Shown here: one piece after another, positions 1 through 62,713 of the stretch | How positions within the stretch are numbered: position 1 is the stretch's first letter | How the letters are laid out: each line of letters begins with the position of its first letter | NCBI RefSeq assembly: GCF_902713615.1 | Contig: NC_052168.1 | Location: 5,890,001-5,954,000 of the forward strand | Length of the DNA: 64,000 nt | From: Scyliorhinus canicula | Lineage: Eukaryota | Direction of reading: 5' to 3' | Notes under the pieces: generated by a model | What the model was told of the DNA's origin: nothing | Databases searched by the model: none | What the model saw: only the letters and a program-made list of their open reading frames with translations | Made by a program: the position numbers and the translations under genes

Positions 1-244
1 CAAACACCCTGTGATGGTTCTGGTGTCTCAACGCAATCGGTAATATAAATGGGAGAAAAAGATTGCAAAGGCACTTGGTTAGATTGTGAGTGGGCAAATC
101 TGCGGCAAATGCAGTTCGATGTGGGGAAGTGCCAAGATCATCCATTTTGGAATGAAAAAGATAAATCAGTGTTTTCCACATGGTGAGGACTGAGGAGCAA
201 TGAGAGTTCAGGATCCATGAAGCAAAAATTGCTAATAGTGGACA

Positions 245-473
245 GGGCAGCACGGTGGCGCAGTAGTTCGCACTGGGATGAACGTGCTGAGGACCCGGGT
301 TCAAATCCCAACCCTGAGTCACTGTCCATGTGGAGTTTGCACATTCTCCCTGTGTCTGCGTGGGTTTCACCCCCACAGCCCAAAAGATGTGCTGGTTCGG
401 TGGACTGGGCACGCTAAATTGCCCCTTAATTGGGAAAAATAAATAATTGAGTACTCTAAATCTATTTTTTTAA
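245..473 (+). mobile_element. HE1/V-SINE-type SINE (short form)
   Basis: tRNA-like head GGGCAGCACGGTGGCGCAGT...GGTTCAAATCC, V-domain GTGGAGTTTGCACATTCTCC; approximate TSD TAGTGGAC; absent at the homologous site upstream of copy 3. Confidence 0.85.
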
Positions 474-1139: not shown

Positions 1140-1300
1140 CAGACCTGATTTGCTCTGGGTGTCACACCCAACCCCCTCTCATTGATTAATTGGTGCCTGG
1201 ATTCATGGCAGATTCCTGATTGGCTATCAGGGATTGTCAATCATCATTGGTGATGTCATTCCCTGTTTGGATGTAGGATGTCCCAGTTGTATAAATACAA
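1140..1300 (+). promoter_or_regulatory. Copy 1 promoter: inverted CCAAT boxes, TGATGTCA, TATAAA 1290-1295
   Basis: Motif block conserved in all nine copies; distal ATTGG mutated here (ctgatttgct). Confidence 0.75.
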
Positions 1301-1359
1301 GAGCTTGTGAGGACAGAGGTCATGTTGTTGCTGTTTGCATTGGGCCATTAACCAGTAAG

Positions 1360-4030
<2,671 letters not shown>

Positions 4031-6141: not shown

Positions 6142-6286
6142 CTTTGTGACTTCCTGGAGACACTACTTGGATGAACAAGTGAAGATGATCAAGAAGCTCG
6201 GAGATCACATCACCAACCTGAAGAGACTGGGAGCCCCTGAGAATGTCACGGGAGCTAACCTGTTTGACAAGCTCACCCTGGACTGA
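6142..6286 (+). pseudogene. Orphan ferritin exon 4 with 2-nt deletion
   Basis: Acceptor ttttcag followed by exon-4 sequence; GAGACTCAC has become GAGACAC, a frameshift giving [10 protein letters not shown]; no associated exons 1-3. Confidence 0.88.
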
Positions 6287-9439: not shown

Positions 9440-9600
9440 AGACCTGATTGGCTCTGGGTATCACACCCAAACCCACTCTCATTGATTAATTGGTGCCTGG
9501 ATTCATGGCAGATTCCTGATTGGCTATCAGAGATTGTCAATCATCATTGGTGATGTAATTCCCTGTTTGAATGTAGGATGTCCCAGTTGTATAAATACAA
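9440..9600 (+). promoter_or_regulatory. Copy 2 promoter: ATTGG at 9447, 9489, 9519, 9546; TGATGTAAT 9551; TATAAA 9590
   Basis: Direct motif reading; conserved across paralogs. Confidence 0.75.
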
Positions 9601-9659
9601 GAGTTTGTGAGGACAGAGGTCATGTTGTTGCTGTTTGCATTGGGCCATTAACCAGTAAG

Positions 9660-12329
<2,670 letters not shown>

Positions 12330-14414: not shown

Positions 14415-14559
14415 CTTTGTGACTTCCTGGAGACACTACTTGGATGAACAAGTGAAGATGATCAAGAAGCTCGGAGATCACATCACCAACCTGAAGAGAC
14501 TGGGAGCCCCTGAGAATGTCACGGGAGCGAACCTGTTTGACAAGCTCACCCTGGACTGA
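14415..14559 (+). pseudogene. Orphan ferritin exon 4 with the same 2-nt deletion
   Basis: Duplicate of 6142..6286 within repeat unit 2. Confidence 0.88.
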
Positions 14560-18377: not shown

Positions 18378-18537
18378 GACCTGATTGGCTCTGGGTATCA
18401 CACCCAACCCCGCTCTCATTGATTAATTGGTGCCTGGATTCATGACAGATTCCTGATTGGCTATCAGAGATTGTCAATCATCATTGGTGATGTCATTCCC
18501 TGTTTGAATGCAGGATGTCCCAGTTGTATAAATACAA
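18378..18537 (+). promoter_or_regulatory. Copy 3 promoter, TATAAA 18527
   Basis: Same CCAAT/CRE-like/TATA block. Confidence 0.75.
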
Positions 18538-18596: not shown

Positions 18597-22071
<3,475 letters not shown>

Positions 22072-24449
22072 CTGGGATTGTAGAATCATTGCTTCTCTAT
22101 GTAATAAAATGTAAATTAAGTCTGCATTCTCTGTACCGAAATAAAAAAAACAATTACTTTATGAATAATTTTCTCTCTAATTCAGTAGCTCATGTATTCC
22201 TAAGATTCATTGCTTCCCCAGATGAGTTTACTGACTGGATTTGGTGACATTTCATCTCCATTTGTGCTGTGAAGCAGCTTAATGTCAATAAGTTGTGGGA
22301 AATGTGGAGAGGACACCCACTTGTTTCCTCCTTGGTCAGGATAATATCCATAAGGAATAATATGCTCTTGGTGGCATCTCCACATTAGATTGTGAGAAAT
22401 GTTTTTCCTCTTGACCCTTTTTGGGGTCATACCTCCCATCCCATAATCGTACTCATGTGCCTGAGTCTCTTTCTTGCAGTTAGTTATGACACTGGTGCAT
22501 CATTACTCAACAGTCAATGTGCATTGTCATAACCGTTAGTCCCACTATAACAGCCTGCAGTGGGTTTTGGATTGCTTGGGGTGTTTTGCCTGCCTACATG
22601 GATAAATCTGCATTTTGGCCAATGTTTGCCGCAGCCTGACATCTATCCTTTCCCAACATCATTGCCTGATGTGCAATGTTTTGACCGTTTCACATTTTGA
22701 TAACAGAAGAGCCACAAACTTGAAATTCACAGCAGGGGACAATCACTTCCTTTATGGAATATGGACAATCGCTTTTGTCCCTCCCTAGTTGCTCTTCAGA
22801 AGGTGGGTGATGGTGAGTTGCCTAAAACTGCTCCACTCCCTGAGCTGTAAGTGCATCCACTGTGCAGTTAGGGAGACAGTTCCTGGATTTTGCCCCTAAG
22901 CCAGTGAAGGAATAGTGATTATATTCCCCAGTCAGGATAGTGAGTGGCTTGGAGGGGAGGATTCCGATGGTGGGGTTCCCAGGTTTCTCCTGCTCCTGTC
23001 TTTCTAGGCAGTAATGGTCATGGGTTTGGTAGATGCTAGTTCCTGCAGTGCATCTTGTAGATGGTGCACACAGCAGCCACTGTAGAATAATTCTTGGAGC
23101 CTTGTGTTCCATACTTGCAGATCTTTTTTTTAAATTTGAAACAGGAGAGGCCATTGTTATATTACCCGTGGTGGTAACATGTAGTGTTCTTTGTCTTTTC
23201 TTCTCAAATGATCCAATGTGTTAACAAAGAATCCACTAATTAAATGAAGTTCGCACACTACTGAGCTACAGTTAATAATAAAGTAATATTGAATCTGTCT
23301 AGCAAAAGTCACTGTACATGATCTAACCTCGTGTTAACACTCTCTAATCTAATCCTCTCTCTAATCTAATCATCTTGTGTTTTCATACTTAGCGATCCAG
23401 AATTCTTTTTGGTCTGATTTATATACAGCCAGGTGGTGGATGCTAGTGTTTGAATTACACAGATGTCAAAGTAATCCTTCACTAACCTGACTCTATACAT
23501 ATCATTACAACTACTGTTTGCATTAAACCTGGATCACTAAACTGTTCTGATGCATCAATATGTTTCTTGAGGATTTCACTTGAATGAAATTGGTCACTTG
23601 TCACATTTAGACAGAATTACACACCTCATCCAAATGCTTAAGTGTCAGATCATCCCAGAGTGGCTGGTAGGACACATGGGCCAGGAACAGAAACTGGCAC
23701 AGGAGGCCCTGGATGAAATTGATATTGGCTGCCTGCACGAACACTCAAATTAGTCCCATTCATGTTTACACAAAGTAAAGACCATACTATGAATATGTAA
23801 CTAATTGCAAGACATAGGTGATCAACTTTACAGCAGGATGAAGATCAGACAGAAGAAGCCATCAGACTCCAGAATGGGCTAGTAGCTGGTCCGATGAGGG
23901 TTTTCAGACGACAATGGATCTTGATTGTACCATCCTGGATAAACAGGAGTATCTTGGTTTTATTTCTTCCCATTAACAAGTTGGGGTGTGGATGGGACAA
24001 TGGAACTCCAGCCAGTTGGGGTGCATACCTATGACTCAATGCTAGCAGACCTGTATAAAGGAAGGAACATTGGAACAGATCTTCAGCGATAACCTGGGAG
24101 TCTCCCAGGCACAATCATCGCAAGAAGAAGGGAACCTGGGTTTCAAAGGCCGGAGAAGATATCCACATCGAGTGATCATAACCTGGCCTTCCACCTTCAC
24201 TAAGTACGGGTAATACCTAGAGCTCAGCTGTGCGTCTGAGTCATATTTTGTGTGTGCGAGAATTGTGAATAAATTTGTGTTAAACCATAATTCTGTTTTG
24301 TCCTTTGTTCCTCTTGCACAGAAAGGCACTTTTGAGTATTAAACTGGCCGAAATATGTGAGATATTACAGACACAAACACCAGAAAAAATAATTATCTTG
24401 AAGTTCCATGCCAATAATGCTTATTTTTCTTCTGACTTGATGTTTCCAG

Positions 24450-24596
24450 CTTTGTGACTTCCTGGTGTTTCAATACTTGGATGAACAAGTGAAGATGATC
24501 GAGAAGCTCGGAGATCACATCACCAACCTGAAGAGACTGGGAGCCCCTGGGAATGGCACGGGAGAGTACCTGTTTGACAAGCTCACCCTGGACTGA
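24450..24596 (+). pseudogene. Orphan ferritin exon 4, in frame (relic or alternative last exon)
   Basis: Acceptor tttccag, 147 nt, open frame [48 protein letters not shown]. Confidence 0.75.
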
Positions 24597-28149: not shown

Positions 28150-28290
28150 TGATGTGATTGGTTCTGGGGAACACACCCCACTCCCTCACCTTAATTGGTC
28201 TCTTGGCAGTTTCCTGATTGGCTATCGGGGAATGTCAATCATCATTGGTGATGTCGTTCCCTGTTAGGATGTCCCAGTTGTATAAATACA
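28150..28290 (+). promoter_or_regulatory. Copy 4 promoter, TATAAA 28281
   Basis: Same block with small deletions; CRE-like site reads TGATGTCG. Confidence 0.72.
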
Positions 28291-28342
28291 AGAGCTGGTG
28301 GTAGGGAGAGTTAGTCTGAGAACAGTGATAGCAATAGTCAAG

Positions 28343-31173
<2,831 letters not shown>

Positions 31174-32984: not shown

Positions 32985-33884
32985 AAAATGAAATGAAATG
33001 AAATGAAAATCGCTTATTGTCACGAGTAGGCTTCAATGAAGTTACTGTGAAAAGCCCCTAGTCGCCACATTCCGGCACCTGTCCGGGGAGGCTGGTACGG
33101 GAATCGAACCGTGCTGCTGGCCTGCTTGGTCTGCTTTAAAAGCCAGTGATTTAGCCCAGTGAGCTAAATCAGCCCCATAATAATAATAACCGCTTATTGT
33201 CACAAGTAGGCTTCAATGAAGTTACTGTGAAAAGCCCCTAGTAGCCACATTCCGGCGCCTGTTCGGGGAGGCTGTGAATGGGACTTGAACCCACGCTGCT
33301 GGTCTTGTTCTGCATTACAAGTCAGCTGTCTTAGCCCACTGTGCTAGACTAGCCCCTAATAAAATCGCTTATTGTCACGAGTAGGCTTCAATGAAGTTAC
33401 TGTGAAAAGCCCCTAGTCGCCACATTCCGGCGCCTGTTCGGGGAGGCTGGTACGGGAATCGAACCGTGCTGCTGGCCTGCTTGGTCTGCTTTAAAAGCCA
33501 GTGATTTAGCCCAGTGAGCTAAATCAGCCCCATAATAATAATAACCGCTTATTGTCACAAGTAGGCTTCAATGAAGTTACTGTGAAAAGCCCCTAGTAGC
33601 CACATTCCGGCGCCTGTTCGGGGAGGCTGTGAATGGGACTTGAACCCACGCTGCTGGTCTTGTTCTGCATTACAAGTCAGCTGTCTTAGCCCACTGTGCT
33701 AGACTAGCCCCTAATAAAATCGCTTATTGTCACGAGTAGGCTTCAATGAAGTTACTGTGAAAAGCCCCTAGTCGCCACATTCCGGCGCCTGTTCGGGGAG
33801 GCTGGTACGGGAATCGAACCGTGCTGCTGGCCTGCCTTGGTCGGCTTTAAAAGCCAGCGATTTAGCCCAGTGAGCTAAACCAGC
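32985..33884 (-). repeat. Head-to-tail array of five ~175-bp tRNA-derived SINEs, A-B-A-B-A', 355-bp period
   Basis: AAAATCGCTTATTGTCAC recurs at 33006, 33361, 33716; minus strand shows A-box/B-box-like motifs (GGTTCGATTCCC); (TTTCA)n and (TTA)n tails. Confidence 0.88.
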
Positions 33885-35564: not shown

Positions 35565-35720
35565 TCTGATTGGCTCTGGGTATCGCACTCCAGCCCCTCT
35601 CCTTTGTCAATTGGTGCCTGGATTCATGGCAGAGTCCTGATTGGCTATCAGTGATTGCCAATCATCATTGGTGATGTCATTCCCTGTCTGAATGCAGGAT
35701 GTCCCAGATGTATAAATACA
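35565..35720 (+). promoter_or_regulatory. Copy 5 promoter, TATAAA 35711
   Basis: Same block. Confidence 0.75.
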
Positions 35721-35778
35721 AGAGCTTGTGTTGGGGAGGGTCAGTTCTAGAACTTTCTAGGTGATAGTAGCAGTGAAG

Positions 35779-37754
<1,976 letters not shown>

Positions 37755-38464: not shown

Positions 38465-39332
38465 TGGTCTAGGGGTGGATGCCCTAAGCAGGGTTAATAC
38501 CTCCTCATCGTGTGCCAGGCTCAGCCTGATACATAAGGCAGTCCACCGGGCAGACATGACTAGGATGAGCAGGTTTTTCGGGGTAGAGGACAGGTGCGTG
38601 GGAAGCCCAGCAAATCATGTCCACTGGTTTTGCTAAGGCAATGTCCACGGTGCTAAAAACACAGGTGGTAGCGACCTTTGGAGTGTCAGAAGAGCCGGGA
38701 GTTCAGAGGTCAAAAGAGGCTGACGTCTCGGCCTTTGCCTGCCTGGTAGCCCGGAGACGGGTCTTATTAATGTGGAGGGGCTCGAAGCCCCCGAGTGGAG
38801 AGACCTGGGTTAGCAACATGGCTGGGTTTCTCAGTCTCGAGAAAATAAAGTTCACCTTCAGAGGGTCAATGGTCGGGTTCACCCGGAGGTGGCAGCCATT
38901 CGTCAACTTTCTCGGAGAAAATTAAAATGTCAGCAGATGCAGAATTCCAGGGGTGGTGAGGGGGGGTAATTGGGGGAGGGAGGGTTGAAGGGGGAAATTG
39001 GGGGGTGGGGGATGAGGGAGGGTTGAAGGGGGAAATTGGGGGGTGGGTGATGAGGGAGGGTTGAGGGGGGAATTGGGGGGGTGGGGAATGGGGTGGTGGG
39101 GACATGGGGGAATGGGGTGGTGGGGACATGGGAGAATGAGGGGGTGGGGTGATGGGGAAGGATGAGGGGGGGATGGGGGGAGATGAGGGCCCGCTTGTTG
39201 TTGGGGTGGGTGAAGATTGAGATGGGGGGAGGGGGGAGAAATGATTATTATACCATTTTGATGTCATTGTCTATGTTATTTTTCTAAAAATTTTCAAATA
39301 CCTTAATAAAGTTATTTGTTTTAAAAAGAAAA
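38465..39332 (+). mobile_element. L1-clade LINE 3' fragment with G-rich 3'UTR
   Basis: ORF2 C-terminus (ARRRVLLMWR..PPS..W...FLSLEKIKFT.RGS..FTRRWQPF), G-tract, AATAAA and A-rich tail. Confidence 0.8.
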
Positions 39333-40049: not shown

Positions 40050-40890
40050 ATACAATGACCTCGTCGCGCCTGACTTGGTGATGTAATGGGGCTATTTAAT
40101 CTTGCTCCGGAACGCCTCGTGAGATTTAACAAAATCTTTCGAGACTTTGCAATCTGTGTTTGGCCCAGATTAACACACTTAATGAGCAATTGGGCTTATT
40201 TGAATCTGTCGATGCTGCATTCTCCCATGGCCCGGGACCTAACGGCCGTGCGTGGGACACCTCGCCATGGCCCTGTTTAGTATTGGTCCTTACAAACATG
40301 GCACCTGGGGGGGGGGGGGGGGGGGGGGGAGAGTCTCCCAGCCCATTGGAGGCCCCCAGATGGTCGGCCTCTCGGTACCTTGACGCTCCTGCTGGCACTT
40401 GGGCACACTTGGCACCGTCACCTGGGCACCCTGGCACTGCCAGGAGGCCAGTGGCATGGCCAGGATGGCAGAGGCACTGCCAGGAGGCCAGTGGCACATC
40501 CAGGATGGTAGGGGCATTGCCAGGGTGGCACTGCCTATGTGTCCGGGTGCCAGGTTGCCCATGCCTGGGATCGGGCCCAGGAGAGCCCTCCCCTGAAGAG
40601 GTGGGGTGAGGGTGGGATGGGGTGGGGGGGGGGGGGGGGGGGGTGCTTGGGGAGCCCCTAAGAGGTAGGTTGGGGCAATGTGGATCTGAAGGCCACGGTG
40701 GGCGAGCTGAACTCAGCAGTGCAGGGAATTAAGGTAAGTGCGGCCTCGGATGGACGTCCCTCACCGAGGCCAGAAAAGCAGCAGAGTCCCGTTAGATAGC
40801 GGGGTCGTGCTCGGTGCTGCAGATGCCAAGAAGCACCCCACCGTACGTGCCCAAAACGGGACTCTGTTTTTTTCATGTTAAATCGCGCCC
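40050..40890. mobile_element. GC-rich MITE-like element with internal 40-bp VNTR
   Basis: Ends TTAAATCGCGCCC then TA; paralogs end near 47432, 53601, 59769; 5' boundary uncertain. Confidence 0.6.
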
Positions 40891-41387: not shown

Positions 41388-41542
41388 TCTGATTGGCTCC
41401 GGATATTGCACACCACCCCCTCCCCTTTATTAATTGGTGGCCGGATTGATGGCCGATTCCTGATTGGCTATCGGGGATTGGCAATCATCATTGGTGATGT
41501 CATTCCCTATTTGCATACAGGATGTCCCAGTTGTATAAATAC
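41388..41542 (+). promoter_or_regulatory. Copy 6 promoter: five ATTGG (41392, 41433, 41463, 41477, 41490), TATAAA 41534
   Basis: Direct motif reading. Confidence 0.75.
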
Positions 41543-41608
41543 AAGAACTCATGGTAGGAAGGCTCAGTTTGAGAACTTTCTAAATAACATTGAGCAGTAA
41601 TAGCGAGG

Positions 41609-43752
<2,144 letters not shown>

Positions 43753-44711: not shown

Positions 44712-45871
44712 GCAATGGGTGGATGCTGTAAGCACGGTTAATATGTCCTCATTGTGTGTCTGATATAGTCCACCGGGCACACATGACAGTGACTAGGATG
44801 TGCAGGTTATTTGGGGTAGAGGACGCGTGAGGTACGTGGGAAGCCCCGCAAATCATGTCCATGTGTTTTGGGCATACCTGAAGCTTAGTGGGTTTTGGCA
44901 GGGTTTTGCTAAGGCAATGTCCACGGTGTTAAAAACACAGGTGGTGCTGAGTCCGGAGGTAGCGATCTATGGAGTGCCAGAAGAGCCGGGAGTTCAGAGG
45001 TCAAAAGAGGTTGACGTCTTGGCCTTTGCCTGCCTGGTAGCCCGGAGACGGGTCTTATTAATGTGGAGGGGCTCGAAGCCCCCGAATGTAGAGACCTGGG
45101 TTAGTGACATGGCTGGGTTTCTCAGTCTCGAGAAAATAAAGTTCACCTTAAGAGGGTCAATGGCCGGGTTCACCCGGAGGTGGCAGCCATTCGTCAACTT
45201 TCTCGGAGAAAATTAAAATGTCAGCAGATGCAGAATTCCAGGGGAGTGGGGGGGGGGGGATGAGGGCGATGGGATGAGGGGGGAATTGAGGGAGGTGGGA
45301 TGAGGGGGGGTAATGAGGGGAGTGGGATGAGGGGGGGAATTGGGGGGGGGAGTGGGATGAGGGGGGGAATTGAGGGGGGTGGGATGAGGGGGGAATTGGG
45401 GGGGTGGGGGATGAGGGGAGTGGGATAAGGGGGGGAATTGGGGGGAAGAGGAGGGGGGAATTGGGGGAGGGAGGGATGAGGGCGGGAATTGAGGGGGGTG
45501 TGATGAGGGGGGAATTGGGGGGTGGGGGATGAGGGGGGTGGGATGAGGGGGTGGGATGAGGGGGGAATTGGGGGGTGGGGATGAGGAGGGGGAGATGAGG
45601 GGGGGAATTGGGGGGTGGGGATGGGGTGGTGGGGCGATGGGAGAATGAGGGGGGAGTGAGGGGGGTGAGGTGAGGAGGGATGGTGGATGAGGGGGTGGGA
45701 TGAGGGGGGGATGAGGGGGGAGATGAGGGCCCGCTTGTTGTTGGGGTGGGTGAAGATTGAGATGGGGGGGGGGGAGAAATGTTTATTATACCATTTTGAT
45801 GTCATTGTCTATGTTATTTTCTAAACATTTTCAAATACCTTAATAAAGATATTTGTTTTAAAAAGAAAAAG
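44712..45871 (+). mobile_element. L1-clade LINE 3' fragment with expanded G-tract
   Basis: ORF 44800..45216 includes HVFW.Y.KLSGFW (degenerate Cys-rich domain); paralog of 38465-39332. Confidence 0.8.
45241..45775 (+). repeat. G-rich minisatellite (GGGATGAGGGGGGAATT-like units)
   Basis: Longest of four paralogous tracts (also ~38950-39237, 51791-52017, 57906-58210). Confidence 0.85.
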
Positions 45872-47929
45872 CAAATAGATCATATAATTTACAGTGCATA
45901 AAGAGGCCATTCAGCCCATTGAGTCTGCATCAGCCCTTGGAAAGAGCACCCTACGTAGGTCCACACCTCCACCCTATCCCTGTAACCTAGTAACCCCACG
46001 GGTAACACGGCCAATCCACCGAACCGCACATCTTTGGACTGTGGGGGGAAACCGGAGCACCCAGAGGAAACCCCGCACACACGGGGAGGATGTGCAGACT
46101 CCACACAGACAGTGACCCAAGCCGGGAATCGAAACCTGGGACCCTGGTGCTGTGAAGCAACTGTGACGCAACTGTGCTAACCACTGTGCTACCGTGCCGC
46201 CCTTGTTTGGGAATGTAAAGTGATGGAGATTTTTGCTACAGTTGTGTAAATCTCTGCCTGACATCTGAAGAGCTGCATTCAGTTCTGATCATTTAACTTT
46301 GGAGGAGATGTAGCAGATTCTCCAGAATGACACCAGAGCTAAACAGGTTAAATGATGAGGACAATTTGCATAGTAGCAATCCCTTGTGTATTAAAGATAA
46401 AGGAATGATTAATGTATATAGTTAGGTAGATAGACAGAGGCTATTTCCTCTTGGACAGGGTCTATTCTCTGAAGGTTGCATATTGACCATTTCTTCACAA
46501 AGGAACAGACCACTTTATGGGGCCACCGCTCCAAAATGCTGATATCAAACAAATATTTCAGAATGGAGACTGTGGACACGATACAATGGCCTCGTCGCGC
46601 CTGACTTGGTGATGTAATGGGGCCATTTAATCTTGCTCCGGAACGCCTTGTGAGATTTAACAAAATCTTTCGAGACGTTGCAATCTGGGTTTGGTCCAGA
46701 TTAACACACTTAATGAGCAATTGGGCTGATTTGAATCTGTCGATGCTGCATTCTCCCATGGCCCGGGACCTAACGGCCATGCCTGGGACACCTCGCCATG
46801 GCCCTGTTTAGTATTGGTCCATACAAACATGGCACCTGGGGGGGGGGGGAATCTCCCAGCCCATTGGAGGCCCCCAGTTGGTCGGCCTCTCGGTACCTTG
46901 ACGCTGCTGCTGGCACTTGGGCACACTTGGCACCGCCACCTGGGCACCCTGGCACTGCCAGGAGGCCAGTGGCACAGCCAGGATGGCAGGGGCACTGCCA
47001 GGAGGCCAGTGGCACAGCCAAGATGGCAGGGGCACTGCCAGGAGGTCAGTGGCACAGCCAGGATGGCAGGGGCACTGCCAGGGTGGCACTGCCTATGTGT
47101 CCGGGTGCCAGGTTGCCCATGCCTGGGATCGGGCCTAGGAGAGCCCTCCCCTGAAGAGGTGGGGTGAGGGGGGGAGGGGGGGGGGTGCTTGGGGAGCCCC
47201 TAAGAGGTAGGTTGGGGCAATGGGGATCTGAAGGCCACGGTGGGCGAGCTGAGCTAGTCAGTGCAGGAAATTAAGGTAAGTACGGCCTCGGCTGGGCGTC
47301 CCTCACCGAGGCCAAAAAATCAGCAGAGTCCCGTTAGATAGCGAGATCGTGCTCGGTGCTGCAGATGGCAAGAAACACCCAGCCGTACGTGCCCAAAACG
47401 GGACTCTGTCTTTTTCATGTTAAATCGCGCCCTATAGGTTATTTTTTGGTTTGGGGATGAAGGTGTATGGAACCCAAGTGGACACACGGCACTAAAAATC
47501 GGAACAGCCATGATAATAATAATACTACACTTTATTGTCACAAGTAGGCTTACATTAACACTGCAATAAAGTTACTGTGAAAAGCTCCTAGTCGCCACAC
47601 TCCGGCACCTGTTCGGGTACACAGAGGGAAAACTCAGAATGTCCAATTCACCTCACAAGCACGTCTTTCGGGACTTGTGAGAGGAAACCGGAGCACCCGG
47701 AGGAAACCCACGCAGACACGGAGTGAACGTGCACACTCACGTGCACACTCCGCACAGACAGTGACCCCAAGCCAGGGAACGAATTTGGGTCCCTGGCGCT
47801 TTGAAGGAACAGGGCTAACCACTGTGCTACTGTGCCGCCAATTGAATGGCTGAACAGGCTTGATGGGCTGAATGGCCTCCTCCTCCTGTTCCTACATTGC
47901 AATCATCCAAATCTGCCTGCTTTCCAAAG

Positions 47930-48085
47930 CTCTGATTGGCTCCGGATATTGCACTCCACCCCCTCCCCTTTATTAATTGGTGGCCGGATTGATGGCTGAT
48001 TCCTGATTGGCTATCGGGGATTGGCAATCATCATTGGTGATGTCATTCCCTAGTTGCATGCAGGATGTCCCAGTTGTATAAATAC
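47930..48085 (+). promoter_or_regulatory. Copy 7 promoter, TATAAA 48077
   Basis: Same block as copy 6. Confidence 0.75.
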
Positions 48086-48151
48086 AAGAACTCATGGTAG
48101 GAAGGCTCAGTTTGAGAACTTTCTAAATAACATTGAGCAGTAATAGCGAGG

Positions 48152-50379
<2,228 letters not shown>

Positions 50380-51289: not shown

Positions 51290-52112
51290 AATGGTCTATG
51301 GGCAGATGCCCTAAGCAGGGTTAATACCTCATCGTGTGCCAGGCTCAGCCTGGTACAATTTAAGGTAGTCCACCGGGCGTACATGACAGTGGCTAGGATG
51401 AGCAGGTTTTTCGGGGTAGAGGGAAGCCCAGCAAATCATGTCCACGTGTTTTGGCCATACCTGAAGCTCAGTGGGTTTTGCTAAGGCAATGTCCACGGTG
51501 CTAAAAACATGGGTGGGGCCGAGTCCAGAGGCCGCGATCTTTGGAGTGTCAGAAGAGCCGGGAGTTCAGAGGTCAAAAGAGGCTGAAGTCTCGGCCTTTG
51601 CCTCCCTGGTAGCCCGGAGATGGATCTTATTAATGTGGAGGGACTTGGGTTAGTGACATGGCTGGGTTTCGCAGCTCTCAAGAAAATAAAGTTCACCTTA
51701 AGAGGGTCAATGGTCGGGTTCACCCGGAGGTGGCAGCCGTTCGTCAACTTTCTCGGAGAAAATTAAAATGTCAGCAGATGCAGAATTCCAGGGGGGTGAG
51801 GAGGGGGGGAATTGGGGGCGGGAGGGATGAGGGGGGGAATTGGGGGTGTGGGGGATGAGGAGGGGGGTGGGATGAGGGGGGATATTGGGGGATGGGGGAT
51901 GGGAGGCATGAGGGGGGGCGATGGGGGGATGAGGGGTGGGATATGGGCGGATGGGGGGGAGATGAGGGCCCGCTTGTTGTTGGGGTGGGTGAAGATTGAG
52001 ATTGGGGGGGGGGGGGAGAAATGTTTATTATACCATTTTGATGCCATTGTCTATGTTATTTTTCAAAAAAATTTCAAATACCTTAATAAAGATTTTTTTT
52101 TAACATGAAAAA
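51290..52112 (+). mobile_element. L1-clade LINE 3' fragment
   Basis: Paralog of 38465-39332. Confidence 0.8.
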
Positions 52113-54099
52113 GCAAATGGAATGATGGATCATATAATTTACAGTGCATAAAGACGCCATTCAGCCCATTGAGTCTGCTTCAGCCCTTGGAAAGAGCACC
52201 CTACGTAGGTCCACATCCACCCTATCCCTGTAACCTAGTAACGCCACCCAACGTTTTTGTTGGACACTAAGGGGCAATTTAGCACGGCCAATCCACCGAA
52301 CCCGCACATCTTTGGACTGTGGGAGGAAACCGGAGCATCCGGAGGAAACCCACGCAGACACGGGGAGAACGAGCAGACTCCACACAGACAGTGACCCAAG
52401 CCGGGAATCAAAACCTGGGACCCTGGTGCTGTGAAGCAACTGTGACGCAACTGTTCTAACCACTGTGCTACCGTGCCGCCCTTGTTTGGGATGTAAAGTG
52501 ATGGAGATTTTTGCTACAGTTGTGTAAATCTCTGCCTGACATCTGAAGAGCTGCATTCAGTTCTGATAATTTAACTTTGGAGGAGATGTAGCAGATTCTC
52601 CGGAAGGACACAGGAGCTAAACAGGTTAAATGATGAGGACAATTTGCATAGTAGCAATCCCTTGTGTATTAAAGATAAAGGGATGATTAATGTATATAGT
52701 TAGGTAGATAGACAGAGGCTATTTCCTCTTGGACAGGGTCTATTCTCTGAAGGTTGCACCTTGACCATTTCTTCACAAAGGAACAGACCACTTTATGGGG
52801 CCACCGCTCCAAAATGCTGATATCAAACAAATATTTCAGAATGGAGACTGTGGACACGATACAATGGCCTCGTCGCGCCTGACTTGGTGATGCAATGGGG
52901 CCATTTAATCTTGCTCCGGAACGCCTCGTGAGATTTAACAAAATCTTTCGAGGCGTTGCAATCTGGGTTTGGTCCTGGGACACCTCGCCATGGCCCTGTT
53001 TAGTATTGGTCCATACAAACATGGCACCTGGGGGGGGGGGGGGGGGGGGTCTCCCAGCCCATTGGAGGCCCCCAGATGGTCGGCCTCTCGGTACCTTGAC
53101 GCTCCTGCTGGCACTTGGGCCACACTTGGCAACGCCACCTGGGCACCCTGGCACTGCCAGGAGGCCAGTGGCATGGCCAGGATGGCAGGTGCACTGCCAG
53201 GAGGCCAGTGGCACAGCCAGGATGGCAGGGGCATTGCCAGGGTGGCACTGCCTATGTGTCCGGGTGCCAGGTTGCCCATGCCTGGGATCGGGCCCAGGAG
53301 AGCCCTCCCCTGAAGAGGTGGGGTGAGAGGGGAGGGGGGGGGGGGGGAAAGGGGTGCTTGGGGAGCCCCTAAGAGGTAGGTTGGGGCAATGGGGGTCTGA
53401 AGGCCACGGTGGGCGAGCTGAGCTAGTCAGTGCAGGAAATTAAGGTAAGTGTGGCCTCGGCTGGACGTCCCTCACCGAGGCCAAAAAATCAGCAGAGTCC
53501 CGTTAGATAGCGGGGTCGTGCTCGGTGCTTCAGATGCCAAGAAACACCCCGCCGTACGTGCCCAAAACGGGACTCTGTCTTTTTCATGTTAAATCGCACC
53601 CTATAGGTTATTGTTAGGTTAGGGGATGAAGGTATATGGAACCCAAGTGGACACACGGCACCTAAAATCGGAACAGCCATGATAATAATAATACTACACT
53701 TTATTGTCACAAGTAGGCTTACATTAACACTGCAATAAAGTTACTGTGAAAAGCTCCTAGTCGCCACACTCCGGCGCCTGTTCGGGTACACAGAGGGAGA
53801 ATTCAGAATGTCCAATTCACCTAACAAACACGTCTTTCGGGACTTGTGAGAGGAAACCGGAGCACCCGGAGGAAACCCACGCAGACACGGAGAGAACGTG
53901 CACACTCACGTGCACACTCCGCACAGACAGTGACCCCAAGCCAGGGATCGAATTTGGGTCCCTGGCGCTTTGAAGGAACAGGGCTAACCACTGCGCTACT
54001 GTGCCGCCAATTGAATGGTTGAACAGGCTTGATGGGCTGAATGGCCTCCTCCTCCTGTTCCTACATTGCAATCATCCAAATCTGCCTGCTTTCCAAAGG

Positions 54100-54255
54100 T
54101 CTGATTGGCTCCGGATATTGCACTCCACCCCCTCCCCTTTATTAATTGGTAACCGGATTGATGGCTGATTCCTGATTGGCTATCGGGGATTGGCAATCAT
54201 CATTGGTGATGTCATTCCCTATTTGCATGCAGGATGTCCCAGTTGTACAAATACA
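54100..54255 (+). promoter_or_regulatory. Copy 8 promoter, TATA mutated (TACAAA 54246-54251)
   Basis: Same block as copy 6 with T>C at 54248. Confidence 0.7.
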
Positions 54256-54320
54256 AGAACTCATGGTAGGAAGGCTCAGTTTGAGAACTTTCTAAGTAAC
54301 ATTGAGCAGTAATAGTGAAG

Positions 54321-56552
<2,232 letters not shown>

Positions 56553-60272: not shown

Positions 60273-60428
60273 TCTGATTGGCTCCGGATATTGCACTCCA
60301 CCCCCTCCCCTTTATTAATTGGTGGCCGGATTCATGGCCGATTCCTGATTGGCTATCTGGGATTGGCAATCATCATTGGTGATGTCATTCCCTATTTGCA
60401 TGCAGGATGTCCCAGTTGTATAAATACA
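60273..60428 (+). promoter_or_regulatory. Copy 9 promoter, TATAAA 60419
   Basis: Same block as copy 6. Confidence 0.75.
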
Positions 60429-60478
60429 AGAACTCATGGTAGGAAGGGTCAGTTTGAGAACTTTTTAAGTAACATTGA

Positions 60479-62713
<2,235 letters not shown>

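What the first reader, a model, noticed from the sequence alone, without database searches (positions are those of the whole stretch)
1290..1362. All nine copies appear to lack the iron-responsive element
Seen: the TATA box lies only 62-75 nt upstream of the ATG in every copy, implying a ~30-45 nt 5'UTR, and none contains a C-N5-CAGUGN-N5 hairpin (CAGTGA in copies 4 and 5 has no pairing stem or bulged C). Known: canonical vertebrate cytosolic ferritin mRNAs are translationally repressed by IRP1/IRP2 through a 5' IRE. Inference: an amplified ferritin system uncoupled from IRP control and set by transcription, suited to bulk accumulation in one tissue or stage (oocyte, epithelium, lens/cornea and immune tissue are untested possibilities).
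Basis: partly seen in the sequence, partly recalled or inferred. Interest (0 to 1): 0.85.

Follow-up and report, generated by a model that had tools for sequence, protein, structure and literature searches.

The report
Shark ferritin gene array without IRE
Nine intact, tandem iron-storage (ferritin) genes of a shark each have a compact TATA promoter and a short, unstructured leader with no iron-responsive element, so they most likely escape the iron-sensing translational switch that controls ordinary vertebrate ferritin. The gene array was already published; the missing switch was not.

Summary
The window holds nine intact four-exon, 173-aa, ferroxidase-competent ferritin genes. Each has a TATA box 62-75 nt before the ATG (copy 8 reads TACAAATA) and an initiator-like motif 32 nt downstream of it, which predicts leaders of 30-43 nt.

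No IRE exists anywhere in the 64 kb on either strand, by Rfam at gathering score, Rfam at E<=10, and my own stem/bulge/loop scan. The same tools found canonical IREs (42-47 bits) in skate and shark FTH1 controls. The leaders are unstructured and diverge like introns (59% identity, against promoter 84% and CDS 98%; pN/pS 0.21).

The same promoter and IRE-less leader occur in chimaera, skate, sawfish and distant sharks. These proteins form their own clade, apart from IRE-bearing FTH1. Decayed IRE fragments just after the predicted start site in some Heptranchias copies point to secondary loss.

A Greenland shark genome preprint already reported the amplified ferritin clusters and their ovary-specific expression, but it does not mention iron or the IRE. 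This scan had already reached the same reading on a neighbouring window of the same genome (s1-200264).

IRP-independence and the start site are inferred from sequence, not shown by experiment.

The parts
1140..1359 (+). Copy 1 promoter and leader: inverted CCAAT / Y-box-like boxes, CRE-like TGATGTCA, TATA at 1290, predicted start near 1322, 38-nt leader, no IRE
   Evidence: fold -6 kcal/mol, z +0.7
1360..4030 (+). Copy 1 ferritin gene; exons 1360-1461, 2632-2778, 3434-3559, 3884-4030; 173 aa
9440..9659 (+). Copy 2 promoter and leader, TATA at 9590, no IRE
9660..12329 (+). Copy 2 ferritin gene, 4 exons, 173 aa
18377..18596 (+). Copy 3 promoter and leader, TATA at 18527, no IRE
18597..22071 (+). 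Copy 3 ferritin gene, 4 exons, 173 aa
28131..28342 (+). Copy 4 promoter and leader, TATA at 28281, initiator A at 28313, 30-nt leader; CAGTGA at 28323 has no stem
28343..31173 (+). Copy 4 ferritin gene, 4 exons, 173 aa
35561..35778 (+). Copy 5 promoter and leader, TATA at 35711, initiator A at 35743, 36-nt leader; CAGTGA at 35771 has no stem
35779..37754 (+). Copy 5 ferritin gene, 4 exons, 173 aa
41384..41608 (+). Copy 6 promoter and leader, TATA at 41534, initiator A at 41566, 43-nt leader, no IRE
41609..43752 (+). Copy 6 ferritin gene, 4 exons, 173 aa
47927..48151 (+). Copy 7 promoter and leader, TATA at 48077, initiator A at 48109, 43-nt leader, no IRE
48152..50379 (+). Copy 7 ferritin gene, 4 exons, 173 aa
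54096..54320 (+). Copy 8 promoter and leader, variant TACAAATA at 54246, initiator A at 54278, 43-nt leader, no IRE
54321..56552 (+). Copy 8 ferritin gene, 4 exons, 173 aa
60269..60493 (+). Copy 9 promoter and leader, TATA at 60419, initiator A at 60451, 43-nt leader, no IRE
60494..62713 (+). Copy 9 ferritin gene, 4 exons, 173 aa

Best explanation
These nine genes belong to a cartilaginous-fish family of H-type (ferroxidase-competent) cytosolic ferritin paralogues that has lost the 5' iron-responsive element. Each unit is most likely transcribed from a compact conserved promoter: several inverted CCAAT / Y-box-like boxes, a CRE-like TGATGTCA, a TATA box, and an initiator 32 nt downstream of the TATA box. 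The predicted mRNA has a 30-43 nt unstructured leader, a 522-nt coding sequence and a 3'UTR of about 55-95 nt. With no IRE near the cap, IRP1/IRP2 cannot block 43S recruitment. Output would therefore be set by transcription multiplied by gene copy number, not by cytosolic iron. Homologous clusters in Greenland shark are reported to be ovary-specific, so the most likely role is bulk ferritin supply in the ovary or oocyte, for iron provisioning of large yolky eggs and/or protection of long-lived oocytes from iron-catalysed damage. What is shown: intact genes, IRE absence, conservation of the promoter and leader architecture, and purifying selection. What is inferred: the start site, IRP-independence, and the tissue and function in this species.
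For: All nine genes are intact, with GT/AG splice sites and 173-aa products. They match Pfam PF00210. The ferroxidase residues E24, Y31, E58, E59, H62, E104 and Q138 are present in the translations.

No IRE was found by Rfam at gathering score or at E<=10 or by my structural scan. The same tools detect the IRE in skate FTH1 genomic loci and in skate and shark FTH1 transcripts at 42-47 bits.

The leaders fold weakly (-2 to -6 kcal/mol, z>0), while the control IRE folds at -12.8 kcal/mol. RNAalifold places no conserved pairs in the leader.

Mean pairwise identity is 59% for the leader, 55% for intron 1, 84% for the promoter and 98% for the CDS. Pooled pN/pS is 0.21.

The initiator consensus has its A exactly 32 nt after the first T of the TATA box in copies 4-9, with a one-mismatch version at the same place in copies 1-3.

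The same promoter and an IRE-less short leader occur in whale shark, bamboo shark, Heptranchias, Callorhinchus, Amblyraja and Pristis.

The IRE-less elasmobranch proteins form a supported clade (98/91) separate from IRE-bearing FTH1.

Amplified clusters and ovary-specific expression are reported in bioRxiv 10.1101/2024.09.09.611499.
Against: No transcript, CAGE or RACE data for this species could be reached, so the start site rests on TATA/initiator logic. IRP binding and the iron response were not tested. The ovary expression comes from one preprint on another shark, and that preprint gives no per-gene detail. Copies 1-3 lack a perfect initiator and carry an ATG at the predicted +1, so their start site is less certain. 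Copy 8 has a weakened TATA box. Only 1359 nt upstream of copy 1 lie in the window.
Confidence: 0.78

Rival explanations
1. An IRE is present but sits in an unrecognised upstream non-coding exon or alternative first exon, so the mRNAs are still under IRP control.
For: Start sites are not measured. Canonical ferritin leaders are longer (IRE about 100-136 nt before the ATG in the controls).
Against: No IRE_I or IRE_II match and no CAGUGN hairpin occur anywhere in the 64 kb on either strand. That span includes every complete spacer between copies. The same holds for 6-10 kb upstream of related genes in six other species. The conserved TATA box and initiator lie directly before the ATG exon.
Confidence: 0.03
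2. The leaders carry a non-canonical IRP-binding or other iron-sensing RNA element that standard IRE models miss.
For: Non-canonical IREs exist in other mRNAs (my own knowledge). Copy 4 keeps a 9-nt match to the loop region of the skate IRE (159 of 20000 shuffles score as well).
Against: The leaders are as diverged as introns (59%), are unstructured (z>0) and share no conserved pairs. A relaxed scan with alternative loop motifs found nothing in any leader.
Confidence: 0.05
3. Most copies are transcriptionally silent duplicates, and IRE loss is just decay in genes that no longer matter.
For: Very high copy number. Orphan exon-4 fragments lie next to copies 1-3. Copy 8 has a mutated TATA box.
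Against: All nine ORFs, splice sites and ferroxidase residues are intact. pN/pS is 0.21, and the promoter is far better conserved than the introns. The promoter architecture is conserved from chimaera to sharks. Expression of the homologous cluster is reported.
Confidence: 0.06
4. Iron still controls these genes, but at the level of transcription (as in plants) rather than translation.
For: This is not excluded by any test here. Transcriptional iron and oxidant control of ferritin is known elsewhere (my own knowledge).
Against: No ARE (TGACNNNGC) occurs in any promoter. A metal-response core occurs only in copies 6-9 and is not conserved across copies. The conserved elements are CCAAT / Y-box-like, CRE-like, E-box and TATA.
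Confidence: 0.08

Closest known systems
Amplified ferritin clusters of sharks (Greenland shark / white shark; bioRxiv 10.1101/2024.09.09.611499)
   Same: Tandem clusters of full-length ferritin genes conserved between distant sharks. The window proteins are 91-95% identical to array-type ferritins of Scyliorhinus, Mustelus, Carcharodon and Chiloscyllium. The scan's earlier notes place further ferritin arrays up to at least 250 kb upstream in the same genome.
   Different: The preprint reports copy numbers, synteny and ovary expression only. It contains no occurrence of 'iron' or 'IRE'. The absent IRE, the conserved promoter and the IRE relics are added here.
Canonical vertebrate FTH1 (IRE/IRP-regulated ferritin H)
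   Same: Same fold, ferroxidase centre and four-exon layout, at about 74-76% identity.
   Different: Skate and shark FTH1 have a 42-47-bit IRE about 100-136 nt before the ATG, and the skate gene (L003) sits behind a GC-rich promoter in which I saw no TATA box. The window genes have a TATA/CCAAT promoter, a leader of about 30-43 nt and no IRE. They also fall in a separate clade.
Snail yolk ferritin (Lymnaea, Biomphalaria)
   Same: A ferritin used in reproduction whose 5'UTR lacks an IRE, implying that iron does not control it (PMC10799875).
   Different: The snail protein has a signal peptide and a 42-aa insertion and is secreted. The shark proteins start directly at the conserved N-terminus and have neither feature.
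Mammalian IRE-less ferritins FTMT and FTHL17 (my own knowledge, not tested here)
   Same: H-type ferritin paralogues without an IRE and with tissue-restricted expression.
   Different: Those genes are intronless retrocopies, and FTMT has a mitochondrial presequence. The shark genes keep all three introns and have no presequence.

Membership tests
Ferritin, H-type (ferroxidase-active) | Ferritin-like four-helix domain (Pfam PF00210) | tested here: met
   The four exon translations match consecutive parts of PF00210 (profile positions 2-21, 25-68, 76-113, 114-141). A 93%-identical full-length relative scores 130 bits.
Ferritin, H-type (ferroxidase-active) | Ferroxidase-centre residues (human E27, Y34, E61, E62, H65, E107, Q141) | tested here: met
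   E24, Y31, E58, E59, H62, E104 and Q138 are present in all nine translations. The mapping to human numbering is from my own knowledge.
Ferritin, H-type (ferroxidase-active) | Four-exon gene with 147- and 126-nt internal exons | tested here: met
   Coding exons of 102/147/126/147 nt with GT/AG borders in all nine copies.
IRE/IRP-regulated mRNAs | IRE hairpin (CAGUGN loop, 5-bp upper stem, bulged C, lower stem) in a UTR | tested here: not met
   Rfam IRE_I/IRE_II: no match at gathering score or at E<=10. Structural scan negative. Controls positive.
IRE/IRP-regulated mRNAs | IRP binding and iron-dependent translation | not testable with these tools
   Needs EMSA, polysome profiling or reporter assays.
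Shark amplified ferritin clusters (Sahm et al. preprint) | Tandem array of full-length ferritin genes shared among sharks | tested here: met
   Nine tandem copies. Homologous tandem genes in Rhincodon, Heptranchias and Chiloscyllium loci. Clade support 98/91.
Shark amplified ferritin clusters (Sahm et al. preprint) | Ovary-specific expression | not testable with these tools
   Only reported for Greenland shark. No transcript data were reachable for this species.
Mitochondrial ferritin (FTMT) | Intronless gene with an N-terminal mitochondrial presequence | tested here: not met
   Three introns. The protein begins [10 protein letters not shown] with no extension.
Molluscan yolk ferritin | Signal peptide and 42-aa insertion | tested here: not met
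   173-aa products collinear with cytosolic ferritins. Features as listed in PMC10799875.

The most novel reading that the evidence does not exclude
Cartilaginous fishes have kept, for roughly 400 million years, a dedicated ferritin lineage that is independent of IRP and expressed in the ovary or oocyte. It arose from an IRE-bearing ferritin by decay of the cap-proximal IRE, of which fragments survive directly after the initiator in some Heptranchias and skate copies. In this lineage, massive gene amplification and a Y-box/CCAAT-TATA promoter replace translational iron sensing. That would make it a vertebrate counterpart of invertebrate yolk ferritin.
Probability: 0.45. Interest if true: 0.7.

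Novelty: new variant of a known kind. Interest (0 to 1): 0.55.

Why it matters
The 5' IRE is treated as a hallmark of vertebrate cytosolic ferritin mRNAs. Here a whole vertebrate class appears to carry a large, conserved ferritin family without it. Some sharks have more than 100 copies according to the preprint, and these are reported to be switched on in the ovary. That separates bulk ferritin production from cellular iron sensing and gives a natural system for asking three things: why the IRE is normally retained, how eggs of long-lived, large-yolked animals are provisioned with iron or protected from it, and how copy number can substitute for translational control. It also matters for annotation. 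These genes are currently named 'ferritin heavy chain A/B-like' or 'oocyte isoform-like', and they should not be assumed to share FTH1 regulation.

Tried and rejected
1. A permissive Rfam search of the whole window gave only sub-threshold miRNA-like hits on a poly-G/poly-C hairpin at 2830-2987 and a few chance hits. None was an IRE.

2. A relaxed structural scan with alternative loop motifs hit only SINE copies, antisense coding sequence and introns. None lay in a leader.

3. I looked for transcripts of array-type genes through exact-protein look-ups. Only genomic contigs came back, and DNA of the Scyliorhinus canicula, Chiloscyllium plagiosum and C. punctatum chromosome assemblies could not be delivered. 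The start site therefore stays inferred.

4. The window's own proteins were not among the database clusters examined.

5. Cytoplasmic polyadenylation elements in the 3'UTRs: none found.

6. Conserved ARE or MRE in the promoters: none found.

7. Conserved RNA structure in the leader plus the start of the CDS: none in the leader.

8. A test for residual similarity of the window leaders to the canonical IRE was not significant, apart from a 9-mer in copy 4.

9. A literature search for 'FTH1B' plus 'shark' gave nothing. The one paper holding 'ferritin', 'iron responsive element' and 'cartilaginous fish' concerns iron-metabolism genes in a notothenioid fish, by its title and abstract, and I did not read it further.

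Full report
**What is there.** The window is shark DNA. The best protein matches are array-type ferritins of Scyliorhinus (95%), Mustelus (93%), Carcharodon and Chiloscyllium. A 25-nt probe from exon 1 hits nine times on the + strand, where none is expected by chance. tblastn and explicit exon assembly give nine complete genes, each with coding exons of 102/147/126/147 nt, GT/AG borders and a 173-aa product. The exon translations match consecutive parts of Pfam PF00210. All seven ferroxidase-centre residues are present in every copy (the mapping to human numbering is from my own knowledge). Coding sequences are 98% identical with pooled pN/pS of 0.21. The first 300 nt of intron 1 are 55% identical and intron 3 is 36% identical. 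These are therefore functional-looking genes, not decaying copies.

**Checking the observation.** The first T of the TATA box lies 70, 70, 70, 62, 68, 75, 75, 75 and 75 nt before the ATG, exactly the stated range. CAGTGA occurs in the leaders of copy 4 (28323) and copy 5 (35771). Only 1/5 and 2/5 of the flanking positions can pair, and T replaces the bulged C.

Rfam finds no IRE_I or IRE_II in the 64 kb on either strand, at gathering score or at E<=10. My own scan required a CAGUGN loop or alternative loops, at least 4/5 upper-stem pairs, a C bulge and at least 3/5 lower-stem pairs. It finds no CAGUGN candidate anywhere and nothing in any leader.

The negative result is meaningful because the same tools score the IRE of skate FTH1 (two genomic loci and one transcript contig) at 46.7 bits. 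Two cDNA-like contigs encoding a bamboo-shark FTH1 score 42-43 bits, against a gathering score of 34. My scan recovers all five of these controls with perfect stems. The spacers between copies lie entirely within the window, so an upstream IRE exon is excluded for copies 2-9.

**Anatomy of the control region.** Upstream of each ATG lies a block that is 84% identical among copies. It contains:
- three to five inverted CCAAT boxes, two of them in the form CTGATTGGCT;
- a CRE-like TGATGTCA, exact in seven of the nine copies (one mismatch in copies 2 and 4);
- an E-box directly before the TATA box;
- the TATAAATACAAGA box itself.

Exactly 32 nt after the first T of the TATA box, copies 4-9 have a perfect initiator consensus (YYANWYY), and copies 1-3 have a one-mismatch version. 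This T-pyrimidine-A triplet is the only near-invariant feature between the TATA box and the ATG in a cross-species alignment. It predicts leaders of 38, 38, 38, 30, 36, 43, 43, 43 and 43 nt.

The leaders are only 59% identical, no better than introns. They fold at -2 to -6 kcal/mol with positive z-scores, against -12.8 kcal/mol for the control IRE. They have no conserved pairs in a 12-sequence consensus fold. Poly(A) signals lie 32-69 nt after the stop codon, and there is no cytoplasmic polyadenylation element. No ARE is present, and no metal-response core is conserved across copies.

**Relatives.** I fetched array-type loci from whale shark, brownbanded bamboo shark, Heptranchias (three loci, eight genes), Callorhinchus, Amblyraja and Pristis. 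None holds an IRE at Rfam gathering score within 6-10 kb upstream.

The promoter module (Y-box-like box, CAATCATCATTGG, CRE-like site, TATAAATACAAGAG) and the short leader are recognisable from chimaera to sharks. In a maximum-likelihood tree the IRE-less elasmobranch proteins, including those of the window, form a clade with 98/91 support. The chimaera protein P0073 branches next to it. The IRE-bearing FTH1 proteins group with bony-vertebrate ferritin H. The IRE-less state is therefore old and is a property of the lineage, not a quirk of this window.

**Origin of the leader.** One Heptranchias gene (L008, ATG at 10001) carries a 19-nt stretch directly after its initiator that matches 17/19 positions of the 5' arm and loop of the shark FTH1 IRE. 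None of 20000 shuffles scores as well. Its loop is mutated to UAGAGU, the 3' arm is missing, and it scores only 12.4 bits against IRE_I.

A dispersed Heptranchias copy (L013) matches the shark IRE at 22/36 positions without gaps, starting at the initiator-homologous position. The match includes the loop end and the 3' arm. The Amblyraja gene and window copy 4 show weaker traces. The other window leaders show nothing significant.

The simplest reading is that the family descends from an IRE-bearing ferritin whose cap-proximal IRE decayed. Occasional conversion from FTH1 is an alternative I could not exclude.

**Mechanism.**
- Shown: intact genes under purifying selection, no IRE, and a conserved TATA/initiator promoter with an unconstrained, unstructured leader.
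- Inferred from the established IRE/IRP model (IRP bound to a cap-proximal IRE blocks 43S recruitment): these mRNAs are translated regardless of IRP activity, so ferritin output depends on transcription and gene dosage.
- Inferred from literature: the Greenland shark genome preprint reports 155 'FTL' and 179 'FTH1' copies, about 80% of them in three clusters syntenic with white shark. It reports ovary-specific expression of the largest cluster and does not mention iron or the IRE.

The CTGATTGG boxes resemble the Y-box that germ-cell Y-box proteins bind in amphibian oocyte genes. That comparison is from my own knowledge and is only a lead. Bulk ferritin for oocytes, either for iron provisioning or for protection of long-lived oocytes, is the most likely use. 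Snail yolk ferritin is a known IRE-less parallel, but it is secreted (PMC10799875).

**Prior notes of this scan.** The same conclusion was reached on a neighbouring window of the same genome (s1-200264). Other notes place further ferritin arrays up to about 250 kb upstream, and more IRE-less ferritins 5.5 Mb downstream. I re-derived the result independently here. The cross-class promoter conservation, the tree and the IRE relics are not among what those notes record.

**Verdict.** The array is published. To the extent of the searchable library, the lack of an IRE is not. IRE-less ferritins exist elsewhere, so this is a new variant of a known kind and moderately interesting. The decisive experiments are start-site mapping, IRP binding assays and tests of iron-dependent translation.

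Noticed in passing
window 6161-6265, 14434-14538, 24447-24593: Orphan copies of ferritin exon 4 (88-91% identical at protein level) lie about 2.1-2.4 kb downstream of copies 1, 2 and 3, with no exons 1-3 beside them. They are remnants of partial duplications or possible alternative last exons.
   Followed up: no
window 2830-2987 (intron 2 of copy 1); weaker at 11135-11272: A run of about 27 G and a run of about 30 C, some 100 nt apart, form a long hairpin. It attracts sub-threshold matches to many miRNA families in Rfam (best 41.6 bits against a gathering score of 83). It is probably a low-complexity artefact rather than a miRNA.
   Followed up: partly
window 1322-1351, 9622-9651, 18559 onward: Copies 1-3 have an ATG at the predicted +1 of the transcript. 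If transcription starts a few bases earlier, this opens a 9-codon uORF in copies 1-2 and an out-of-frame ORF overlapping the ferritin start in copy 3. Copies 4-9 lack it.
   Followed up: partly
window 54246-54253: The TATA box of copy 8 is mutated to TACAAATA, while its ORF and the rest of its promoter are intact. It may be a weaker copy.
   Followed up: no
window 38962-39157, 45249-45711, 51801-51941: G-rich minisatellites (units such as GGGGGGTGGGGATGA, periods 24-119) lie in the spacers after copies 5, 6 and 7. They could form G-quadruplexes and may be recombination hot spots of the array.
   Followed up: no
window 40432-40530, 46951-47088, 53150-53247: A 20/40-nt tandem repeat (GGCACTGCCAGGAGGCCAGT...) lies about 1.1 kb upstream of the ATG of copies 6, 7 and 8. 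It is duplicated together with the unit.
   Followed up: no
window 33006-33884: 2.5 tandem copies of a 355-nt unit (98% identical) that looks like a tRNA-derived SINE, in the spacer between copies 4 and 5.
   Followed up: no
window, all nine coding sequences versus introns: Synonymous divergence among copies is only about 5%, while introns and leaders differ by 40-60%. This suggests gene conversion focused on exons or selection on synonymous sites.
   Followed up: partly
L008 9950-9973; L013 9943-9978: Decayed IRE fragments lie directly after the predicted start site in two Heptranchias ferritin paralogues (17/19 and 22/36 matches to the shark FTH1 IRE). L008 also shares an 11-mer, GTTTAGTTTTG, with the distal part of the skate FTH1 leader.
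   Followed up: partly
window 240-470 and 640-960: tRNA-derived SINE copies in opposite orientation flank the start of the window. The same element recurs in several spacers and accounts for most of the relaxed IRE-scan hits on the minus strand.
   Followed up: no
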